21,811 nt of DNA from the NCBI RefSeq assembly GCF_006345805.1, contig NW_021823605.1:1-21811 (forward strand). Direction: 5' to 3'. The notes beneath the pieces are model-generated. The model had not been told where the DNA came from. It did no database searches and saw only the letters and a list, made by a program, of their open reading frames with translations. Of this stretch, positions 1,127-20,789 are shown in pieces. Position numbers and translations under genes: made by a program. The DNA comes from Octopus sinensis. Lineage: Eukaryota. Within the stretch, counting starts at the first letter, position 1, and each line of letters begins with the position of its first letter.

Positions 1127-1191
1127 GAAGCCACTGGGATGGATTTGCCTGTTCTCATGGCTGAAGCCTGGGGATGTAAGACACAACTACC

Positions 1192-1428
1192 TATTTCTTT
1201 ACTACCCACAAGGGGCTAAACACAGAGGGAACAAACAAGGACAGACAAATAGATTAAGTCGATTACCTTGACCACAGTGCGTAACTGGTACTTAATTTAT
1301 CAACCCCGAAAGGATGAAAGGCAAAGTCGACCTCTGCAGAATTTGAACTCAGAACGTAACGGCAGACGAAATACGGCTGCGCATTTCGCGCCCGGCGTGC
1401 TAACGTTTCTGCCAGTTCGCGCCGCCTT
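1192..1428 (-). mobile_element. tRNA-derived SINE, family 1 (head plus one body unit; Meta/MESC-like central domain)
   Basis: The minus strand reads aaggcggcgcgaactggcagaaacgttagc (A-box-like), gagttcaaattc (B-box-like), cctttcatcctttcggggttgataaattaagtacc, and ends gtaaagaaata. An 8-bp direct repeat caactacc at 1184-1191 and 1429-1436 is a probable TSD. The Meta-domain assignment is from recalled consensus similarity. Confidence 0.85.
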
Positions 1429-1896: not shown

Positions 1897-2060
1897 CAAA
1901 CGCATATATATATGACGAGCTTTCAGTTTCTATCTACCAAATCCACTCACAAGGTTTTGGTCAGCCCGAGGTACAGCAGAAGACATTTGTTCACCGTGCT
2001 ATGCAGTGGGACTGAACTCGGACCATATGGTTGGGAAGCAGCTTCTTTCCACACAGCACC
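1611..2060 (-). mobile_element. tRNA/CORE-type SINE, family 2, with internal (TA)(TG)n microsatellite and 3' tail
   Basis: Minus strand: gctgtgtgg (A-box-like), gggttcagtccc-type B-box region, CORE-like segment, gatttggtagatagaaactgaaag, then (TG)n at about 1823-1900 and a tail at 1611-1805 that matches 8227-8430. Confidence 0.8.
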
Positions 2061-2146
2061 GCATCTAAGTACTAATTAGGCTCGACGTTGCTTAACTTCG
2101 GTGATCGGACGAGAACCGGTGCTTTCAACGTGATGTGGCCGTAAGC
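2057..2146 (-). rRNA. 5S rRNA 5' fragment (about nt 1-85 to 1-90; truncated pseudogene)
   Basis: The minus strand reads GCTTACGGCCACATCACGTTGAAAGCACCGGTTCTCGTCCGATCACCGAAGTTAAGCAACGTCGAGCCTAATTAGTACTT(AGATG), the invertebrate 5S 5' region including loop C and box A. Box C is degenerate and the 3' end is absent. Confidence 0.92.
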
Positions 2147-2251: not shown

Positions 2252-2852
2252 GATATATATATGTATGCATATTCTTTTTCATCGAGTTCCTTATTTAACA
2301 AAGGTACTTGAGCCATCAATCTTTCAATGCACCAATTTACAAAACGGTGCCGTTTAGAAGTACACAACACCGTTTCATTAGCATGTACGGTTGGCCATAA
2401 ATTGGTGAAGGCGACAGGAAACGTCCTTCGTATATCTTTCGTCAAACAGCTTCATAATGGCAACTTCACGGTGTTGCCCACACGATTTAATGGTTTCTGT
2501 CTAAAGACATTTATAATACGTAGAACCGCCTATTTATAAATAAGGGTAAACCGTCACCGACACGGCATTTTCTTAAACCCAACAAAACCGTTTCAAGAAG
2601 TCCGTGTGTGAAATGAGAAAAACCTCACAAACTCAAGGCTGAAAAAGTCTCCTGCTCATATCGTGTAAATGGTGTTGTGTTGTGATCTCAGACAAATACT
2701 GAAAGATTACCGTTGTTGTAATTACCTACTTATCTACCATCAAGGAACATGAAGGTAATTGCTGGGGCGTGACAGGCTATTGCAGATTTGTATATATTAG
2801 CTCCATAATTTTGTTGCAGCTGTTGTTGTTTAGCCTTTGATAAACCTTTTTT

Positions 2853-3080
2853 TTTTACTACCCACAAGGGGCTAAACGCAGGGAGGACAAACAAGGACAG
2901 ACAAAGGGATTAAGTCTATTACATCGACCCCAGTGCGCAACTGGTACTTAATTTATCGACCCCGAAAGGATGAAAGGTAAAGTCGACCTCGGCGTAATTT
3001 GAACTCCGAACGTAACGGCAGACGAAATACCGCAAAGCATTTCGCCCGGCGTGCTAACGTTTCTGCCAGCTTACCACCTT
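2853..3080 (-). mobile_element. SINE family 1, full-length monomer
   Basis: Same head and body as 1192-1428; the minus strand begins aaggtggtaagctggcagaaacgttagc. Confidence 0.85.
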
Positions 3081-3106
3081 CCAATAAGAATGAGCAATAG
3101 ATAATA

Positions 3107-3280
3107 TATTTCTTTACTACCGACAAGGGGCTAAACACAGAGGGGACAAACAAGGACAGAGAAAGGGATTAAGTCTATTACATCGACCCCAGTGCGTAAC
3201 TGGTACTTAATTTATCGACCCCGAAAGGATGAAAGGCAAAGTCGATCTCGGCGGAATTTGAACTCAGAACGTAATACAGA
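3107..3280 (-). mobile_element. SINE family 1, headless body unit
   Basis: Body unit from the B-box-like motif to gtaaagaaata, 26 bp from the previous copy and in the same orientation. Confidence 0.85.
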
Positions 3281-4075: not shown

Positions 4076-4387
4076 TTATACTCTTTTCTACTCTTGGCAA
4101 AAGGACTGAAATTTTTGTACGCAACTGGTATTTAATTTATAGAACCCGAAAGAATGACAGGTAACGTCAACCTCGGCGGAATTTCAACTCAGAACGTAAA
4201 GACAGACGAAATACCTATTTCTTTATTACCCACAAGGGGCTGAACACAGAGAGGACAAGCAAGGACAGACAAACGGACTAAGTCGATTACATCGAACCAG
4301 TGCGTAACTGGTACTTAATTTATTGACCCCAAAAGGATGAAAGGCAAAGTCGACCACAGCGGAATTTGAACTCAGAACGTAACGGCA
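4076..4387 (-). mobile_element. SINE family 1, headless dimer (one full unit plus a partial second unit)
   Basis: Contains the junction gacgaaatacc|tatttcttta at 4215/4216, the reverse complement of the array junction. 4076-4116 may be an alternative tail or simply flank. Confidence 0.8.
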
Positions 4388-6231: not shown

Positions 6232-6675
6232 CATACGTGGATTTGTGAAGGAGTAAGATTGGGCTGATTTGTAACAAGATCGGACTCTTCCACTCAAAAT
6301 TGCTGATGGTGTGGGAATAGAGGATTTTATTTTTCAGCCAAGAATCGCGTACATATTGTGTCTAGCATTGCAATGTTTTTCAACAAATACAAATATAGGT
6401 AAAGAGTTTTTCTCCCAATATATTTGAAATGTTCTTGCCAAGCACTCAAACTAAATCAGTCAGCTGGTTATGATAGCTTCTATAATTACAATTTTCTTAC
6501 GTATTCTATGTTATTGACGTTTCTTTTTCGTTGTATTTATTATATTTTCTGAGTCGTTACCATTACAGTTTCCAGTTTAAAATCTAGCTGGCAATGGCTT
6601 CGCTATTCATTCTTTCGATATCAACTGAGTGTACAGAATAACTAACTTAAGTATGAGATTTTTCTGGTCAGAGTT

Positions 6676-7213
6676 ACATACATACATACATACATACATA
6701 TACACATACATACATACATACATACATACATACATACATACATACATACATACATACATACATACATGCATACATACATACATACATACACATAACATAC
6801 ATACATACATACATAATACATACATACATACATACATACATACATACATACCACATACATACATGCATACATGCATGCATGCATACATACATACATACAT
6901 ACATACTACATACATACATACATACATACATACATTCATACGTACATACATACATACACACATACATACATACATACATACATACATACATACATACAAC
7001 ATACATACACACACATTCATACATACATACATACATACATACATACATACATACATACATACATACATACATTCATACGTACATACATACATACACACAT
7101 ACATAATACATACATACATACATACATACATGCATACATATGTACATACATACATACATACATACATGCATACATACATGCATACATACATGCATACATA
7201 TATACACGTATAC
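6676..7213. repeat. (TACA)n tetranucleotide array, about 540 bp
   Basis: Seen directly; source of the YVCM and HTYI ORFs. Confidence 0.95.
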
Positions 7214-9100: not shown

Positions 9101-9630
9101 CCTGCCGTTATATTTTCGGTTTTCTGGTGAATAAAATGAGTTGGATATCCGAAAAGGTATCTACATCTGCTCGTTAGTACATAAATGCATAAAATAATTC
9201 TCCAGAACAGAATACATACTACTAGGCCATGCTCGCTTGCAAGTGACGGCTATGGTTTTGGTTACTAGCAATCTGAACCAAATCCCACTAGTATGTAAGG
9301 AATAGGATCATACCCTTTTTCTCACAACCAAAATTAATAATAATAAAAATAATCGCAATGGTGTAGCTTGGGTTTTCGTCGCTCTTCATAAACCTAAGAT
9401 TCGTTTGTCTAAAGCAATCACACTTACGAAAAAAGGTTGTTCTGTCGGTACAACCTACAGTTGACCACTGTATTGTCGGTTCCCATATTACGAAGAATAC
9501 TGAAATTTGCTTTCAATTATCATTGTATTCATATTGCTTGCTTAGTCCGTTACGTCTAAAACGTTCCCATAAAATTCGTTTAGGGATTTGGTTTGCAAAT
9601 TCTTTGTGTGAGTTCGTGTGTTGAAGCATA

Positions 9631-9894
9631 TTCTGTTGTGTCTGGGGAGAGTCATTTTCTTTTTGTGCCTTATAATATAACACACTCACCAGTAAAATTT
9701 CACTTTTTTCTTATTCTATTTTCCTAAAATTTTCGTTGCGTCTTGCAACCTTTTCAATAGTTTTGACTCTCGGTTGCAAGACGCAACGAAAATTTTAGGA
9801 AAAAATATAATAAGAAAAAAGTGGAAATTTACTGGTGAGTGTGTTATATTATAAGGCACAAAAAGAAAATGACCTCTCCCCAGACACAACAGAA
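9631..9894. repeat. Long inverted repeat: arms 9631-9750 and 9772-9894, 21-bp spacer (foldback/MITE-like)
   Basis: The left arm ends ...ttttcgttgcgtcttgcaacc and the right arm begins ggttgcaagacgcaacgaaaa.... Complementarity extends to ttctgttgtgtctgggg / ccccagacacaacagaa with only a few mismatches or indels. Confidence 0.92.
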
Positions 9895-10111
9895 CATTCC
9901 CATAAATTTATCCCAAAAGTCAATGCTTGTTTTCAGACTTTATTTAGTCCTTGTTTCATACGTTCCGAGGAACATAAAAAACGTCTTCCTTTCACGAATC
10001 TCAAGTTATTCCGATGGCTGAGAAAAACTGAGAACATGCATCAGATACACACACATACACACGTGTGTGAGGGACGGTGTCTGAGGGGTGGACAGTATTA
10101 TGTTATACATC

Positions 10112-13100
10112 AAGGCACCGAGCTGGCAGAAACGTTAGCACGCCGGGCGAACTGCTTTGCGGTATTTCGTCTGACGTTACATTGAGTTCAAATTCCGCCG
10201 AGGTTGACTTTGCCTTTCATACTTTCAAGGTCTATAAATGAAGTGCCAGTTACACACTGGGGTCGATGTAATCGCCTTAATCCCTTTGTCTGTCCTTGTT
10301 TTTTTCCCTCTGTGTTTGGCCCCTTTTGGGTAGTAAAGAAATAGGTATTTCGTCTGACGTTTATGGTGAGTTCAAATTCGCCGAGGTTGAATTTGCCTTT
10401 CATCCTTTCAAGGTCTATAAAAAGTACCAGTTACACACTGGGGTCGATGTAATCGCCTTAATCCGTTTGTCTGTCTTGTTTGTTTCTCTGTGTTTGGCCC
10501 CTTTTGGGTAGTAAAGAAATAGGTATTTCGTCTGACGTTACGTTCTGAGTTCAAATTCCGCCGAGGTTGAGGTTGACTTGCCTTTCATCCTTTCAAGGTC
10601 TATAAATTAAGTACCAGTTACACACTGGTGTCGATGTAATAGACTTAATCCGTTTGTCAGTCCTTGTTTGTCCTCTCGTGTTTGGCCCCTTTTGGGTAGT
10701 AATAAAGAAATAGGTATTTCGTCTGACGTTACGTTCTGAGTTCAAATTCCGCCGAGGTTGACTTTGCATTTCATCCTTTCAAGGTCTATAAATTAAGTAC
10801 CAGTTACGCACTGGGGTCGATATAATCGCTTAATCCGTTTGTCTGTCCTTGTTTGTTTCCTCTCTGTGTTTGGCCCCTTTCGGGTAGTAAAGAAATAGGT
10901 ATTTCGTTCTGACGTACGTTCTGAGTTCAAATTCCGCCGAGGTTGACTTTGCCTTTCATTCTTTCAAGGTCTATAAATTAAGTACCAGTTACACACTGGT
11001 GTCGATGTAATAGACTTAATCCGTATGTCAGTCCTTGTTTGTCCTCTCTGTGTTTGGCCCCTTTTGGGTAGTAAAGAAATAAGTATTTCGTCTGACGTTA
11101 CGTTCTGAGTTCAAATTCCGCCGAGGTTGACTTTGCCTTTCATCCTTTCAAGGTCTATAAATTAAGTACCAGTTACGCACTGGGGTCGATATAATCGCCT
11201 TAATCCGTTTGTCTGTCCTTGTTTGTTCCCTCTGTGTTTGGCCCCTTTTGGGTAGTAAAGAAATAGGTATTTCGTCTGACGTTACGTTCTGAGTTCAAAT
11301 TCCGCCGAGGTTGACTTTGCCTTTCATCCTTTCAAGGTCTATAAATTAAGTACCAGTTACGCACTGGGGTCGATATAATCGCCTTAATCCGTTTGTCTGT
11401 CCTTGTTTGTCCTCTCTGTGTTTGGCCCCTTTTGGTAGTAAAGAAATAGGTATTTCGTCTGGACGTTACGTTCTGAGTTCAATTCCGCCGAGGTTGACTT
11501 TGCCTTTCATCCTTTCAAGGTCTATAAATTAAGTACCAGTTACACACTGGGGTCGATATGTAATAGACTTAATCCGTTTGTCAGTCCTTGTTTGTCCTCT
11601 CTGTGTTTGGCCCCTTTTGGTAGTAAAGAAATAGGTATTTCGTCTGACGTTACGTTCTGAGTTCAAATTCCGCCGAGGTTGACTTTGCCTTTCATCCTTT
11701 CAAGGTCTATAAATTAAGTACCAGTTACACACTGGGGTCGATGTAATAGACGTAATCCGTTTGTCTGTCCTTGTTTGTCCTCTCTGTGTTTGGCCCCTTT
11801 TGGGTAGTAAAGAAATAGGTATTTCGTCTGACGTTACGTTCTGAGTTCAAATTCCGCCGAGGTTGACTTTGCCTTTCATCCTTTCAAGGTCTATAAATTA
11901 AGTACCAGTTACACACTGGGGTCGATGTAATAGACGTAATCCGTTTGTCTGTCCTTGTTTGTCCTCTCTGTGTTTGGCCCCTTTTGGGTAGTAAAGAAAT
12001 AGGTATTTCGTCTGACGTTACGTTCTGAGTTCAAATTCCGCCGATGTTGACTTTGCCTTTCATCTTTTCAAGGTCTATAATTTAAGTACCACTTACACAC
12101 TGGTGTCGATGTAATCGCCTTAATCCGTTTGTCTGTCCTTGTTTGTTCCCTCTGTGTTTGGCCCCTTTTGGGTAGTAAAGAAACAGGTATTTCGTCTGAC
12201 GTTACGTTCTGAGTTCAAATTCCGCCGATGTTGACTTTGCCTTTCATCCTTTCAAGGTCTATAAATTAAGTACCAGTTACACACTGGTGTCGATGTAATA
12301 GACTTAATCCCTTTGTCTGTCCTTGTTTGTCCTCTCTTTGTTTGGCCCCTTTTGGGTAGTAAAGAAATGGGTATTTCGTCTGACGTTACGTTCTGAGTTC
12401 AAATTCCGCCGAAGTTGACTTGCCTTCATCCTTTCAAGGTCTTAAATTAAGTACCAGTTACACACTGGTGTCGATGTAATAGACTTAATCCCTTGTCTGT
12501 CCTTGTTTGTCCTCTGTGTTTGGCCCCTTTTGGGTAGTACAGAAATAGGTATTTCGTCTGACGTTACGTTCTGAGTTCAAATTCCGCCGAGGTTGACTTT
12601 GCCTTTCATCCTTTCAAGGTCTATAAATTAAGTACCAGTTACGCACTGGGGTCGATATAATCGCCTTAATCCGTTTGTCTGTCCTTGTTTGTCCTCTCTG
12701 TGTTTGGCCCCTTTTGGGTAGTAAAGAAATAGGTATTTCGTCTGACGTTACGTTCTGAGTTCAAATTCCGCCGAGGTTGACTTTGCCTTTCATCCTATCA
12801 AGGTCTATAAATTAAGTACCACTTACACACTGGTGTCGATGTGTAATCGCCTTAATCCGTTTGTCTGTCCTTGTTTGTTCCCTCTGTGTTTGGCCCCTTT
12901 TGGGTAGTAAAGAAACAGGTATTTCGTCTGACGTTCGTTCTGAGTTCAAATCCGCCGATGTTGACTTTGCCTTTCATCCTTTCAAGGTCTATAAATTAAG
13001 TACCAGTTACACACTGGTGTCGATGTAATAGACTTAATCCCTTTGTCTGTCCTTGTTTGTCCTCTCTGTGTTGGCCCCTTTTGGGTAGTAAAGAATGGGT

Positions 13101-14757
13101 ATTTCGTCTGACGTTACGTCTGAGTTCAAATTCCGCCGAGGTTGATTTGCCTTTCATCCTTTCAAGGTCTATAAATAAGTACCAGTTACGCACGGGGTCG
13201 ATATAATCGCCTTAATCCGTTTGTCTGTCCTTGTTTGTCCTCTCTGTGTTTGGCCCCTTTTGGGGTAGTAAAGAAATGGGTATTTCGTCTGACGTTACGT
13301 TCTGAGTTCAAATTCCGCCGAGGTTGACTTTGCCTTTCATCCTATCAAGGTCTATAAATTAAGTACCAGTTACACACTGGTGTCGATGTAATAGACTTAA
13401 TCCCTTTGTCTGTCCTTGTTTGTCTCTCTCTGTGTTTGGCCCCTTTTGGGTAGAAAGTAAAGAAATAGGTATTTCGTCTGACGTTACGTTCTGAGTTCAA
13501 ATTCGCCGAGGTTGACTTGCCTTTCATCCTTCAAGGTCTATAAATTAAGTACCAGTTACGCACTGGGGTCGATATAATCGCCTTAATCCCTTTGTCTGTC
13601 CTTGTTTGTCCTCTCTGTGTTTGGCCCCTTTTGGGTAGTAAAGAAATAGGTATTTCGTCTGACGTTACGTTCTGAGTTCAAATTCCGCCGATGTTGACTT
13701 TGCCTTTCATCTTTTCAAGGTCTATAAATTAAGTACCACTTACACACTGGTGTCGATGTAATCGCCTTAATCCGTTTGTCTGTCCTTGTTTGTTCCCTCT
13801 GTGTTTGGCCCCTTTTGGGTAGTAAAGAAACAGGTATTTCGTCTGACGTTACGTTCTGAGTTCAAATTCCGCCGATGTTGACTTTGCCTTTCATCCTTTC
13901 AAGGTCTATAAATTAAGTACCAGTTACACACTGGTGTCGATGTAATAGACTTAATCCTTGTTTGTCCTTGTTTGTCCTCTCTGTGTTTGGCCCCTTTGGG
14001 TAGTAGTAAAGAAATGGGTATTCGTCTGACGTTACGTTCTGAGTTCAAATTCCGCCGAGGTTGAATTTGCCTTTCATCCTGTCAAGGTCTATAAATTAAG
14101 TACCAGTTACGCACTGGGGTCGATATAATCGCCTTAATCCCTTTGTCTGTCCTTGTTTGTCCTCTCTGTGTTTGGCCCCTTTTGGGTAGTAAAGAAACAG
14201 GTATTTCGTCTGACGTTACGTTCTGAGTTCAAATTCCGCCGATGTTGACTTTGCCTTTCATCCTTTCAAGGTCTATAAATTAAGTACCAGTTACACACTG
14301 GTGTCAATGTAATAGACTTAATCCCTTTGTCTGTCCTTGTTTGTCCTCTCTGTGTTTGGCCCCTTTTGGGTAGTAAAGAAATGGGTACTTCGTCTGACGT
14401 TACGTTCTGAGTTCAAATTCCGCCGAGGTTGACTTTGCCTTTCATCCTTTCAAGGTCTATAAATTAAGTACCAGTTACACACTGGTGTCGATGTAATAGA
14501 CTTAATCCCTTTGTCTGTCCTTGTTTGTCCTCTCTGTGTTTGGCCCCTTTTGGGTAGTAAAGAAATGGGTACTTCGTCTGACGTTACGTTCTGAGTTCAA
14601 ATTCCGCCGAGGTTGACTTTGCCTTTCATCCTTTCAAGGTCTATAAATTAAGTACCAGTTACACACCGGTGTCGATGTAATAGACTTAATCCCTTTGTCT
14701 GTCCTTGTTTGTTCCCTCTGTGTTTGGCCCTTTTGGGTAGTAAAGAAATAGGAATTC
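10112..14757 (+). repeat. SINE-derived tandem array: one SINE family 1 head plus 25 units of ~184 bp
   Basis: Head aaggcaccgagctggcagaaacgttagc at 10112. Units start at 10161, 10344, 10522, 10713, 10898, 11082, 11266, 11449, 11634, 11818, 12002, 12186, 12370, 12548, 12732, 12918, 13098, 13279, 13468, 13649, 13833, 14017, 14200, 14384 and 14568; the last ends at 14750. Confidence 0.95.
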
Positions 14758-15342
14758 GTTATTCATTTAATATAGCTTGTCTCGTTCATTTTATTGCATT
14801 CTATCCATTTATCTATTTTACGCAATACAGATGCCTGCATATACCTACTTACATGCGATGTGTGCATGTAGTTATAAGACTATAATTCTGTACATTTAAT
14901 GTTGTTCTCAATTTAATACGGTTCTCAGTTTTATCTAATTTTCTATTTATTTTTACTTCACAAGGATGCAACGGATTCTTGCCTGCCTGCCTGCCTGTTT
15001 CAGCCTCGTTTTGAATCCGGTAGCAATTGATGTAAATTACTCTTGGAACTACATAACATTGACTTCATTCCATGCTAAGTGCAGTTAGGTTTAAGGTCAT
15101 AGGCAGAGAGACCGGTATTACATTAAAGTTCAACTGTCAATCAAATGTTAATTTCTTGTTTTCTAACAACTGAAAGGTCACCATCAGGTAAGGAAGGATT
15201 ACTCACTAAAAACGAATGATTTTTATACGAAACAACAATGAAAATTTTAGATGGACTTTTCTTCGTCTCTTTATTTCTTAGAATCACGTTCTGCTTTAAT
15301 TTTTTTCTGTTAATATTTTTTATACAGCATCCTTTCTCTTAC

Positions 15343-16572: not shown

Positions 16573-16789
16573 GTGTAAAGCGTGGGGAATTCCATTAGAA
16601 AAAGTTTTAATCGATTTTCTCGGTAAGTATGGTGCTGAGGAAAAAATAGAAACACATTCCAATTTATGCACCCATCCACATGTGTACCATTTTTCACGCG
16701 AATCCACCCAGCCGTTTGGCTGTGAACCCCAAGACATGAAAGAATACCACGATCGCCCATGTCCAATTTATATTATAGATTATATTTAT

Positions 16790-16975
16790 ATAACATACTA
16801 TATATATATATAATATATTATATATAATATATATATATATATATATAGATATATATATAGATATATATATATATATATACAATATATATATATATATAAT
16901 ATATAATTAATATATATATATATACATATATATATATATTATATACATGTATATATACATATTATATATATATAT

Positions 16976-17030
<55 letters not shown>
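16790..17030. repeat. (TA)n microsatellite
   Basis: Seen directly. Confidence 0.95.
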
Positions 17031-17033
<3 letters not shown>

Positions 17034-17371: not shown

Positions 17372-17541
17372 GTACACACACACACACGCACACACACACG
17401 CACACACATACACACACGCACATACATAGCGTAGAATAGACACGAATATTTCATTATATAATTAAATCTAATTCTTGTTTAATTCAGAATTTAGTTCATG
17501 AATATGTTGTGTGGGTGGGTGAAGCGATAATATATATATAC

Positions 17542-17598
<57 letters not shown>

Positions 17599-17708
17599 GT
17601 ATGTATATATGAAATATATATATATATACATATATATATATGTGTATATAATATATATATATATATATATAATATATATATATATATAATATACATATAT
17701 ATACACAA

Positions 17709-17776
<68 letters not shown>

Positions 17777-17869
17777 ATATGTAAATATATATATATATAC
17801 ATATATATATATGTGTATATAATATATATATATATAATATTCTATATATATATTATTATATATATATAC

Positions 17870-17943
<74 letters not shown>

Positions 17944-20556: not shown

Positions 20557-20789
20557 GAAATACCTATTTCTTTACTACCCACAAGGGGCTAAACATAGAA
20601 GGGACAAACAAGGACAGACAACCGATTAAGTTGATTATATAGACCCCAGTGCGTAACTGGTACTTAATTTATCGACCTCGAAAGGATGAAAGCAAAGTCG
20701 ACCTCGGCGGAATTTGAACTCAGAACGTAACGGCAGACGAAATACGGCTGCGCATTTAGCCCGGCGTGCTAACGTTCCACCCTCCTTCC
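20557..20789 (-). mobile_element. SINE family 1 monomer ending 8 nt into a second unit
   Basis: Head and body as in 1192-1428; the minus-strand 3' end reads gtaaagaaata-ggtatttc. Confidence 0.85.

What the first reader, a model, noticed from the sequence alone, without database searches (positions are those of the whole stretch)
10112..14757. A single SINE expanded into a 25-unit, 184-bp satellite
Seen: one tRNA-like head (10112-10160) is followed by 25 head-to-tail copies of only the downstream ~184 bp. The units share states that differ from the dispersed monomers: tctgAcg vs tctgCcg, gtTgac vs gtCgac, caaggtcta vs cggggtcga, and tttGgccccttTtggg vs tttAgccccttGtggg. The block is flanked by an imperfect 9-bp direct repeat, gttatacat (10102-10110) and gttattcat (14758-14766). 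Inference: one insertion amplified in place from an already diverged founder, so this may be a satellite caught at birth. The unit is close to a nucleosome repeat length. TE-derived satellites are known in general; I do not recognise a description of this one.
Basis: partly seen in the sequence, partly recalled or inferred. Interest (0 to 1): 0.8.

Follow-up and report, generated by a model that had tools for sequence, protein, structure and literature searches.

The report
SINE-derived 184-bp tandem array
One copy of a short mobile element (a SINE) has had its rear 184 bp multiplied 25 times in place, a real example of a mobile element turning into a small satellite-like repeat; this kind of array is already described in reptiles and bivalves, and this one is not newborn.

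Summary
Tandem Repeats Finder reports an array at 10161-14756 (period 184, 25.0 copies, 93% matches). It follows a single 49-bp SINE 5' end at 10112-10160.

The 25 units form one clade against the dispersed copies (bootstrap 92%), which fits growth in place from one already diverged founder.

It is not a satellite caught at birth. Units differ by 5.1% on average (0-11%). There are supported sub-clades, near-identical units lie far apart, and the three head-proximal units are the most decayed.

The 184-bp unit length follows from SINE anatomy. The SINE 3' end repeats the 9-nt motif GGTATTTCG that opens the unit. A second, independent head-less dimer with the same junction lies at 4117-4387.

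The array-type allele CCCCTTTTGGG adds a T4 run, a pol III stop, in 23 of 25 units. The array is therefore unlikely to be an active source element.

The architecture matches the SINE-derived satellites of squamates (PMC10702118). I file it as a new member of a known kind. No genome-wide data could be reached, and the organism is unverified.

The parts
10102..10110 (+). Candidate 5' target-site duplication, GTTATACAT
   Evidence: 8/9 match to 14758-14766. The chance of such a match within 20-nt flanks is 3-6%.
10112..10160 (+). Single SINE 5' end (head) with the A-box-like motif TGGCAGAAACG at 10124-10134
   Evidence: It aligns to the 5' ends of dispersed copies D1, D2 and D5 and occurs once at this locus. 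ARAGORN and the Rfam tRNA model find no tRNA.
10161..14751 (+). 25 head-to-tail units of 178-191 bp (mode 184). Each carries a B-box-like motif, and 23 carry a T4 run near unit position 165.
   Evidence: TRF, unit alignment, fixed differences, tree, T runs and B boxes.
10184..10196 (+). B-box-like motif GAGTTCAAATTCC of unit 1. The 16-mer GAGTTCAAATTCCGCC that contains it is exact in 21 of 25 units.
14752..14757 (+). GAATTC. With the preceding G and following G (GGAATTCG) it is a decayed copy of the motif GGTATTTCG that ends monomeric SINEs and opens each unit.
14758..14766 (+). Candidate 3' target-site duplication, GTTATTCAT
4117..4387 (-). Independent head-less dimer remnant (1.5 units) with the same junction, AAAGAAATA|GGTATTTCGTCTG
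   Evidence: Its two units differ by about 20%. The second unit shares two array-type states, T51 and T84.
1186..1423 (-). Dispersed full-length SINE copy D1, flanked by the 8/8 direct repeat GGTAGTTG
2845..3079 (-). Dispersed full-length SINE copy D2 with an A-rich 3' end
3107..3266 (-). Dispersed 5'-truncated SINE copy D3, starting near element position 72
20559..20787 (-). Dispersed SINE copy D5, with a decayed or truncated 5' end and a 3' end ...AAATAGGTATTTC

Best explanation
This is a SINE-derived, satellite-like tandem array that grew in place from one SINE insertion. It needs no function to explain it.

Shown:
- An approximately 235-bp SINE family populates the window: five dispersed copies, three of them 5'-truncated, all with the common 3' end.
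- One further copy at 10112 keeps a single 5' end and is followed by 25 copies of element positions 50-233.
- All units share seven substitutions that the dispersed copies lack.

Inferred:
1. The founder inserted by LINE-mediated, target-primed reverse transcription, leaving the candidate duplication (G)TTATNCAT.
2. Before the array grew, the founder either acquired the seven substitutions or already carried them. One of them creates a T4 pol III stop, which would disable it as a source gene.
3. The first duplication arose by slippage or unequal exchange between two copies of the 9-nt motif GGTATTTCG. One copy is internal at position 50 and one is at the SINE 3' end, 184 bp apart. This gives a seamless junction and fixes the unit length.
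4. Once two 184-bp repeats existed, repeated out-of-register exchange and conversion expanded and partly homogenised the array. The head-proximal units were left as the oldest and most decayed.
For: - Array and its single head.
- SINE properties of the family: dispersed copies, 5' truncations with a constant 3' end, an 8/8 direct repeat around D1, and no T>=4 run in four of the five dispersed loci (D4 has one T4).
- Seven fixed differences in 24-25 of 25 units, including unit 1, which is joined to the head.
- Units monophyletic at 92% bootstrap, with sub-clades at 94% and 98%. This argues against a single burst.
- U01-U03 have 14-16 differences from the array consensus, the three highest of 25; the others have 2-11.
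- Near-identical units lie far apart (U07/U14 and U11/U20 differ at 1 site, U12/U23 at 2), and adjacent units are no more alike than distant ones (13.8 vs 13.9 differences).
- The nine bases after ...AAAGAAATA in five independent element ends match the unit start at 27/45 positions (p about 7e-7 to 1e-4).
- The same junction occurs independently at 4203-4229.
- T4 is present in 23 of 25 units, plus a T7 in unit 1.
- The same architecture is documented in squamates, including locus-specific subvariants (which there often alternate): tandem units plus one longer terminal unit reaching the SINE terminus, and units that include box B (PMC10702118).
Against: - No genome-wide or cross-species data could be obtained. 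The array alleles may not be private to this locus.
- The second unit of the dimer at 4117-4387 shares two of the five array-type states that can be scored there. This hints at a wider subfamily.
- The target-site duplication is only weakly significant.
- The 3'-terminal motif partly overlaps D1's flanking repeat, so some of that signal could be target preference rather than SINE sequence.
- Multi-unit block duplication, which I first suspected, is not supported by permutation tests (P 0.15-0.64). The mode of growth is therefore inferred only from the tree and the edge effect.
- tRNA ancestry of the head is not detectable with the models available.
Confidence: 0.6

Rival explanations
1. This locus is one of many belonging to a multi-locus SINE-derived satellite family. 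The seven 'array-specific' alleles would then be family-wide, and the units or their founder came from elsewhere (a dispersed multimeric subfamily, segmental copying or circular-DNA reinsertion) rather than diverging at this site.
For: In squamates, sSat variants with fixed unit boundaries occur at tens to thousands of loci and are more alike between loci than the parent SINEs (PMC10702118). A second locus with the same junction lies 6 kb away. Its second unit shares T51 and T84 with the array; T84 is a transversion.
Against: The first unit of the dimer carries none of the array alleles, and its second unit lacks three of the five that can be scored. The T4 run in 23 of 25 units would stop pol III before the 3' end needed for retroposition. 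The array keeps a normal SINE head and a candidate target duplication.
Confidence: 0.25
2. The multimer was made during insertion. The reverse transcriptase repeatedly jumped from position 50 of the SINE RNA to the matching 3' end of another or the same RNA, and copied the head only on the last template.
For: The 9-nt identity between position 50 and the 3' end is the kind of microhomology that template switching uses. The product would have exactly one head at the 5' end and a single target duplication. The dimer at 4117-4387 could be such a product.
Against: Four of the five other elements in the window are monomers, so the jump frequency is low and 24 successive jumps are very improbable (inference). 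Units of equal age from one RNA should give a star tree, but there are supported sub-clades and an edge gradient. The mechanism could still explain the first dimer.
Confidence: 0.07
3. The array is real, but its length is an assembly artefact: units were over-expanded or collapsed.
For: Tandem arrays are error-prone in assemblies, and no reads are available here.
Against: Units are individually distinguishable, with 0-11% pairwise divergence and many private indels. No multi-unit block is exactly duplicated: the best two-unit pair still differs at 8 sites. There are no N gaps.
Confidence: 0.05

Closest known systems
SINE-derived satellites (sSats) of squamate reptiles (Vassetzky, Kosushkin & Ryskov 2023, Mob DNA 14:21, PMC10702118)
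   Same: Both are tandem repeats of a portion of a tRNA-related SINE with one longer terminal unit that runs to the SINE terminus. In both, units can include the 3' part of the head with box B, plus the body and tail; whiptail sSat3Ati2 is 179 nt. Both show locus-specific subvariants within an array (in squamates these often alternate; here no ordered pattern is significant). Unit similarity of 82-94% is comparable.
   Different: The SINE family is different and so, apparently, is the phylum: on memory only, this looks like a cephalopod mollusc. Multi-locus distribution, between-locus homogeneity and subtelomeric position, which characterise the abundant squamate sSats, could not be examined. 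Here a short direct repeat within the SINE explains the unit boundaries, a point that paper does not make.
Tandem-like SINE arrays in bivalves (HCD-tRNA SINEs; Scapharca broughtonii arrays of 4-15 units, PMC11481361)
   Same: Both are direct tandem arrays of SINE sequence in a mollusc, attributed to unequal homologous recombination.
   Different: Those arrays were scored as consecutive SINE elements of at least 150 bp from one family and reach at most 15 units. Here only the head-less 184-bp portion is repeated, 25 times.
Octopus SINE families OK, OR1 and OR2 (Ohshima & Okada 1994, cited in PMC4758252)
   Same: From memory only, the dispersed element resembles the abundant octopus tRNA-related SINE. 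SINEs make up 11.6% of the O. vulgaris genome, and a 5S-type SINE family is listed there too (PMC13282606). Both points fit this window.
   Different: Not tested, because no octopus sequence was reachable. Alignment to a recalled MIR (CORE-SINE) consensus was not significant.
Classical satellite DNA
   Same: Both have a head-to-tail array, a unit in the 150-200 bp range and partial homogenisation.
   Different: This array is only 4.6 kb at one known locus. There is no evidence of heterochromatic location or of high genomic abundance.

Membership tests
SINE (LINE-mobilised, pol III-type retroposon) | Short, non-coding, multiple dispersed copies | tested here: met
   There are five dispersed copies of about 160-240 bp besides the array. 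ORFs in the window have no Pfam match.
SINE (LINE-mobilised, pol III-type retroposon) | 5' truncation with a common 3' end (signature of target-primed reverse transcription) | tested here: met
   D3 starts near position 72, D4a near 61 and D5 near 20. All reach ...GTAGTAAAGAAATA.
SINE (LINE-mobilised, pol III-type retroposon) | tRNA-derived head with internal A and B boxes | tested here: inconclusive
   A-box-like TGGCAGAAACG and B-box-like GAGTTCAAATTCC are present. ARAGORN finds no tRNA, and the Rfam tRNA model gives no hit at E<=10.
SINE (LINE-mobilised, pol III-type retroposon) | Target-site duplications | tested here: inconclusive
   D1 has an 8/8 GGTAGTTG repeat. The array has 8/9, with a 3-6% chance level. 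None is clear for D2, D3 or D5.
SINE (LINE-mobilised, pol III-type retroposon) | No internal pol III terminator (T>=4) in active copies | tested here: met
   D1, D2, D3 and D5 have no T>=4 run. The array units do have one: T4 in 23 of 25.
SINE (LINE-mobilised, pol III-type retroposon) | 3' tail shared with a partner LINE | not testable with these tools
   There is no LINE in the window, and no genome or repeat library was reachable.
SINE-derived satellite (sSat sensu PMC10702118) | Tandem repeats (at least 4 monomers) of a portion of a SINE | tested here: met
   25 units correspond to element positions 50-233.
SINE-derived satellite (sSat sensu PMC10702118) | One longer terminal unit extending to the SINE terminus | tested here: met
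   The head at 10112-10160 is joined to unit 1.
SINE-derived satellite (sSat sensu PMC10702118) | Locus-specific subvariants within the array (often alternating in squamates) | tested here: inconclusive
   Subvariant clades exist, with bootstrap 94% and 98%, and their members are scattered along the array. No regular alternation or ordered pattern is significant by permutation (P 0.15-0.64).
SINE-derived satellite (sSat sensu PMC10702118) | Several loci per genome with the same unit boundaries | tested here: inconclusive
   One further locus (4117-4387) has the same junction. The rest of the genome is unreachable.
Classical satellite DNA | Long arrays at high genomic abundance, usually heterochromatic | not testable with these tools
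   The array is 4.6 kb. Its abundance and chromosomal position are unknown.
Multimeric SINE that retroposes as a multimer (Alu-like dimers) | The whole multimer is one pol III transcript and is copied as a unit | tested here: not met
   T7 and T4 runs lie at positions 188 and 213 of head plus unit 1, and T4 is in 23 of 25 units. On established knowledge of pol III termination, these would end transcription inside the first unit.
CORE-SINE superfamily (e.g. MIR, octopus OR2) | Conserved central CORE domain | tested here: inconclusive
A collinear weak match exists but is not significant.

The most novel reading that the evidence does not exclude
This SINE family may be a built-in satellite generator. 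Because its 3' end repeats an internal 9-nt motif, head-less 184-bp arrays would arise recurrently across the genome. The resulting arrays, each a string of B-box motifs without A boxes, could act as clustered TFIIIC-binding sites (boundary or insulator-like elements) or as phased nucleosome arrays. If so, a cephalopod-type, SINE-rich genome would be seeding new tandem-repeat chromatin domains from one retroposon.
Probability: 0.12. Interest if true: 0.6.

Novelty: new member of a known kind. Interest (0 to 1): 0.3.

Why it matters
It is a clean single-locus example of a dispersed retroposon becoming a tandem repeat. It retains the founder's head and a candidate target duplication, and it shows a simple structural reason for the unit boundaries: a 9-nt direct repeat inside the SINE. 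If the source genome is a cephalopod, as I suspect but could not show, it would extend SINE-derived satellites from squamates to a very SINE-rich invertebrate lineage. It would also be a tractable locus for measuring array turnover between individuals and species. It does not reveal a new mechanism or function.

Tried and rejected
1. Finding other loci or the organism. All attempts returned nothing:
- A protein search with junction-spanning consensus ORFs gave 0 hits.
- Exact-pattern scans of metagenome, prokaryote-genome and viral collections with two conserved SINE motifs gave 0.
- An exact ORF look-up was not on record.
- SINE and 5S sequence strings were not found in the full text of papers.

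2. tRNA identity of the head. ARAGORN and Rfam were negative.

3. CORE-SINE membership. Alignment to a recalled MIR consensus was not significant.

4. Higher-order repeat or multi-unit block duplication. By eye there was a recurring three-type motif and low-difference two-unit blocks. Permuting the unit order gives equally good blocks (P 0.15-0.57; 0.46-0.64). I dropped the claim.

5. Coding context. Seven non-microsatellite ORFs had no Pfam domain.

6. Rfam miRNA hits in the window all fall below gathering scores and lie on microsatellites or on a palindrome. I rejected them as artefacts.

7. The nucleosome-length idea. No test is available here, and the unit length is already explained by SINE anatomy.
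Full report
**Observation.** Tandem Repeats Finder reports one array at 10161-14756 with period 184, 25.0 copies, 93% matches and score 7819. A blastn of head plus first unit (10112-10344) against the window shows that query positions 1-49 occur once at this locus, while positions 50-233 recur 25 times head to tail. The same element is present five more times on the minus strand: D1 1191-1419, D2 2850-3071, D3 3107-3266, D4 4123-4387 and D5 20564-20776. The junction 27-mer occurs 22 times in the array and once at 4203-4229, against 0 expected from shuffles.

**Diagnostic alleles.** I aligned the 25 units with the dispersed copies. Seven columns separate them:
- A instead of C in TCTGACG (24/25 units vs 4/4 dispersed).
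- T instead of C in GGTTGAC (25/25 vs 5/5).
- AA instead of GG, and T instead of G, in CAAGGTCTA (25/25).
- G instead of A, and T instead of G, in TTTGGCCCCTTTTGG (25/25 vs 5/5).

Unit 1, which is joined to the head, carries all seven.

**Flanking repeat.** GTTATACAT (10102-10110) and GTTATTCAT (14758-14766) are present. An 8/9 match somewhere within 20-nt flanks arises in 2.9% of random genomic pairs and 5.8% of shuffled flanks. It is compatible with a target-site duplication but is weak evidence on its own.

**Is the element a SINE?**
- For: there are several dispersed copies. Three are 5'-truncated (D3, D4a, D5) and all reach the same 3' end, as target-primed reverse transcription produces. 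D1 is flanked by an 8/8 direct repeat, GGTAGTTG. Four of the five dispersed loci have no T>=4 run on the sense strand, as expected of pol III templates. A-box-like (TGGCAGAAACG) and B-box-like (GAGTTCAAATTCC) motifs are present.
- Not confirmed: ARAGORN finds no tRNA, and the Rfam tRNA model gives no match even at E<=10 on the isolated heads. 'tRNA-like' therefore rests on the two box motifs only.

The B-box-like motif lies inside the repeated unit. The unit begins within the promoter-bearing region and each unit carries a B box but no A box. The 16-mer GAGTTCAAATTCCGCC is exact in 21 of 25 units.

**What sets the unit boundaries.** Every junction reads ...AAAGAAATA|GGTATTTCGTCTG. Monomeric copies do not stop at AAATA. 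D5 continues GGTATTTC, D1 GGTAGTTG, D2 GGTTTATC, and the array itself ends GGAATTCG. Over five independent ends, the nine following bases match the unit start GGTATTTCG at 27 of 45 positions (p about 7e-7 at a 0.25 background, 1e-4 at 0.32).

The SINE therefore most likely ends with a copy of a motif it also carries at position 50, which gives a 9-nt direct repeat 184 bp apart. One caveat: in D1 part of this motif is also in the 5' flank, so some of the signal may reflect target preference.

D4 supports a recurrent, register-fixed process. It is a head-less 1.5-unit dimer with the identical junction, on the other strand and 6 kb away. Its first unit has dispersed-type alleles, and its two units are about 20% apart. 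The 184-bp length is thus explained by SINE anatomy, without invoking nucleosomes.

**History of the array.**
- In a neighbour-joining tree the 25 units are monophyletic against the dispersed copies (bootstrap 92%). Supported sub-clades exist: U11/U15/U20 at 94% and U09/U10 at 98%.
- Mean pairwise substitution distance among units is 5.1%, with a range of 0-11%. The dispersed copies differ by 8-12%.
- U01, U02 and U03 have 14, 15 and 16 differences from the array consensus, the three highest values. The others have 2-11.
- Adjacent units are no more alike than distant ones (13.8 vs 13.9 differences).
- The closest relatives of many units lie far away: U07/U14 and U11/U20 differ at 1 site and U12/U23 at 2.

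This is not the star tree of a single burst, and it is not neighbour-only slippage. It fits repeated out-of-register exchange or conversion, with the head-proximal edge escaping homogenisation. I first read the order of subtypes as multi-unit block duplications, but permuting the unit order gives equally good blocks (P 0.15-0.64). I make no higher-order-repeat claim.

On a rough clock, the 7 fixed changes in 184 bp (3.8%) plus about 2.5% per unit lineage add up to about the age class of the dispersed copies. The array is not newborn.

**Competence as a source element.** The array-type change CTTGTGG to CTTTTGG creates a T4 run in 23 of 25 units, and unit 1 also has a T7. By established knowledge of pol III termination at T runs, a transcript from the head would stop before the SINE 3' end. 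This argues against the array alleles marking an actively retroposing subfamily, and against the multimer being copied as one transcript. The step is inferred, not shown.

**Rivals.**
1. The locus belongs to a multi-locus sSat-like family and the seven alleles are family-wide. The squamate precedent and D4b sharing T51 and T84 favour this. D4a's dispersed-type alleles and the T4 run argue against it. I put it at about 0.25, and it is untestable here.
2. Reverse-transcriptase template switching between the two GGTATTTCG copies made the multimer at insertion. This is plausible for a first dimer. It is very unlikely for 24 consecutive jumps when four of five neighbouring elements are monomers, and it conflicts with the non-star tree. 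I put it at about 0.07.
3. The unit count is an assembly error. The units are individually distinct and no block is exactly duplicated. I put it at about 0.05.

**Comparison with what is known.** Vassetzky et al. 2023 (PMC10702118) describe SINE-derived satellites in 56 squamate genomes. These are tandem repeats of a SINE portion with one longer terminal unit reaching the SINE terminus. Units often include box B or the end of the head plus body and tail (67-215 nt; 179 nt in one whiptail variant). Locus-specific subvariants alternate, unit similarity is 82-94%, and arrays run from a few to about 1000 units. Bivalve HCD SINEs form tandem arrays of up to 15 units (PMC11481361). The present array matches this architecture feature by feature, so the kind is known.

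I found no description for octopus or other cephalopods in the papers searched. I also could not verify the organism. That it is an octopus SINE is my recollection only. The very high microsatellite and SINE density, and the presence of a 5S-type element, fit what is reported for O. vulgaris (PMC13282606).

**Verdict.** It is a new member of a known kind and of modest interest. The decisive tests, none of which could be run here, are a genome-wide census of the junction and the seven alleles, the orthologous locus in relatives, and spanning long reads.

Noticed in passing
window 2048-2146 (-), with tail to about 2000: 5S rRNA match of 68.4 bits (gathering 38) with a deletion of about 19 nt. 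It is followed by a T-arm-like GGTCCGAGTTCAGTCCCACTGC and flanked by (GT)n/(GA)n. It looks like a 5S pseudogene or a 5S-headed SINE rather than a working gene.
   Followed up: partly
window 9628-9897: Near-perfect palindrome of about 270 bp: 72-nt arms at 96% complementarity, with nested 47- and 37-nt arms. It lies 215 bp upstream of the array and is foldback- or MITE-like. It produces spurious sub-threshold plant-miRNA Rfam hits. Whether it influences array instability is unknown.
   Followed up: partly
window 4117-4387 (-): Head-less 1.5-unit SINE dimer with the same junction as the array. Its units are about 20% apart, and the second is cut at unit position about 107 next to an A-run. This is a 3' truncation that retroposition alone does not produce.
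   Followed up: yes
window 2845-3266 (-): Two SINE copies in the same orientation only 36 bp apart: a 5'-truncated D3 followed by a full-length D2. This suggests clustered insertion near an existing SINE 3' end.
   Followed up: no
whole window, e.g. 492-863, 6675-7206, 16769-17033, 17530-17943: The window is very rich in microsatellites, including (GGAA)92, (TACA)135, (TA)138 and (AT)211. All Rfam miRNA-family hits lie on these or on the palindrome and are below gathering scores. No ORF tested has a Pfam domain.
   Followed up: partly
SINE copies throughout the window: CpG remains frequent in the SINE copies: 15-17 per roughly 235 bp in dispersed copies and 5-10 per 184-bp unit. There is little sign of methylation-driven CpG decay. 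This fits the low TE methylation reported for octopus (PMC9476566), if the organism is an octopus.
   Followed up: no
heads of D1/D5 versus D2/array (e.g. 10150-10162): There are two head variants just upstream of the unit start. D1 and D5 read GCGCAGCCGTATTTCG. D2 and the array read GCTTTGCGGTATTTCG. Only the second gives the full GGTATTTCG match to the 3' end, so one subfamily may be more prone to tandem duplication.
   Followed up: no
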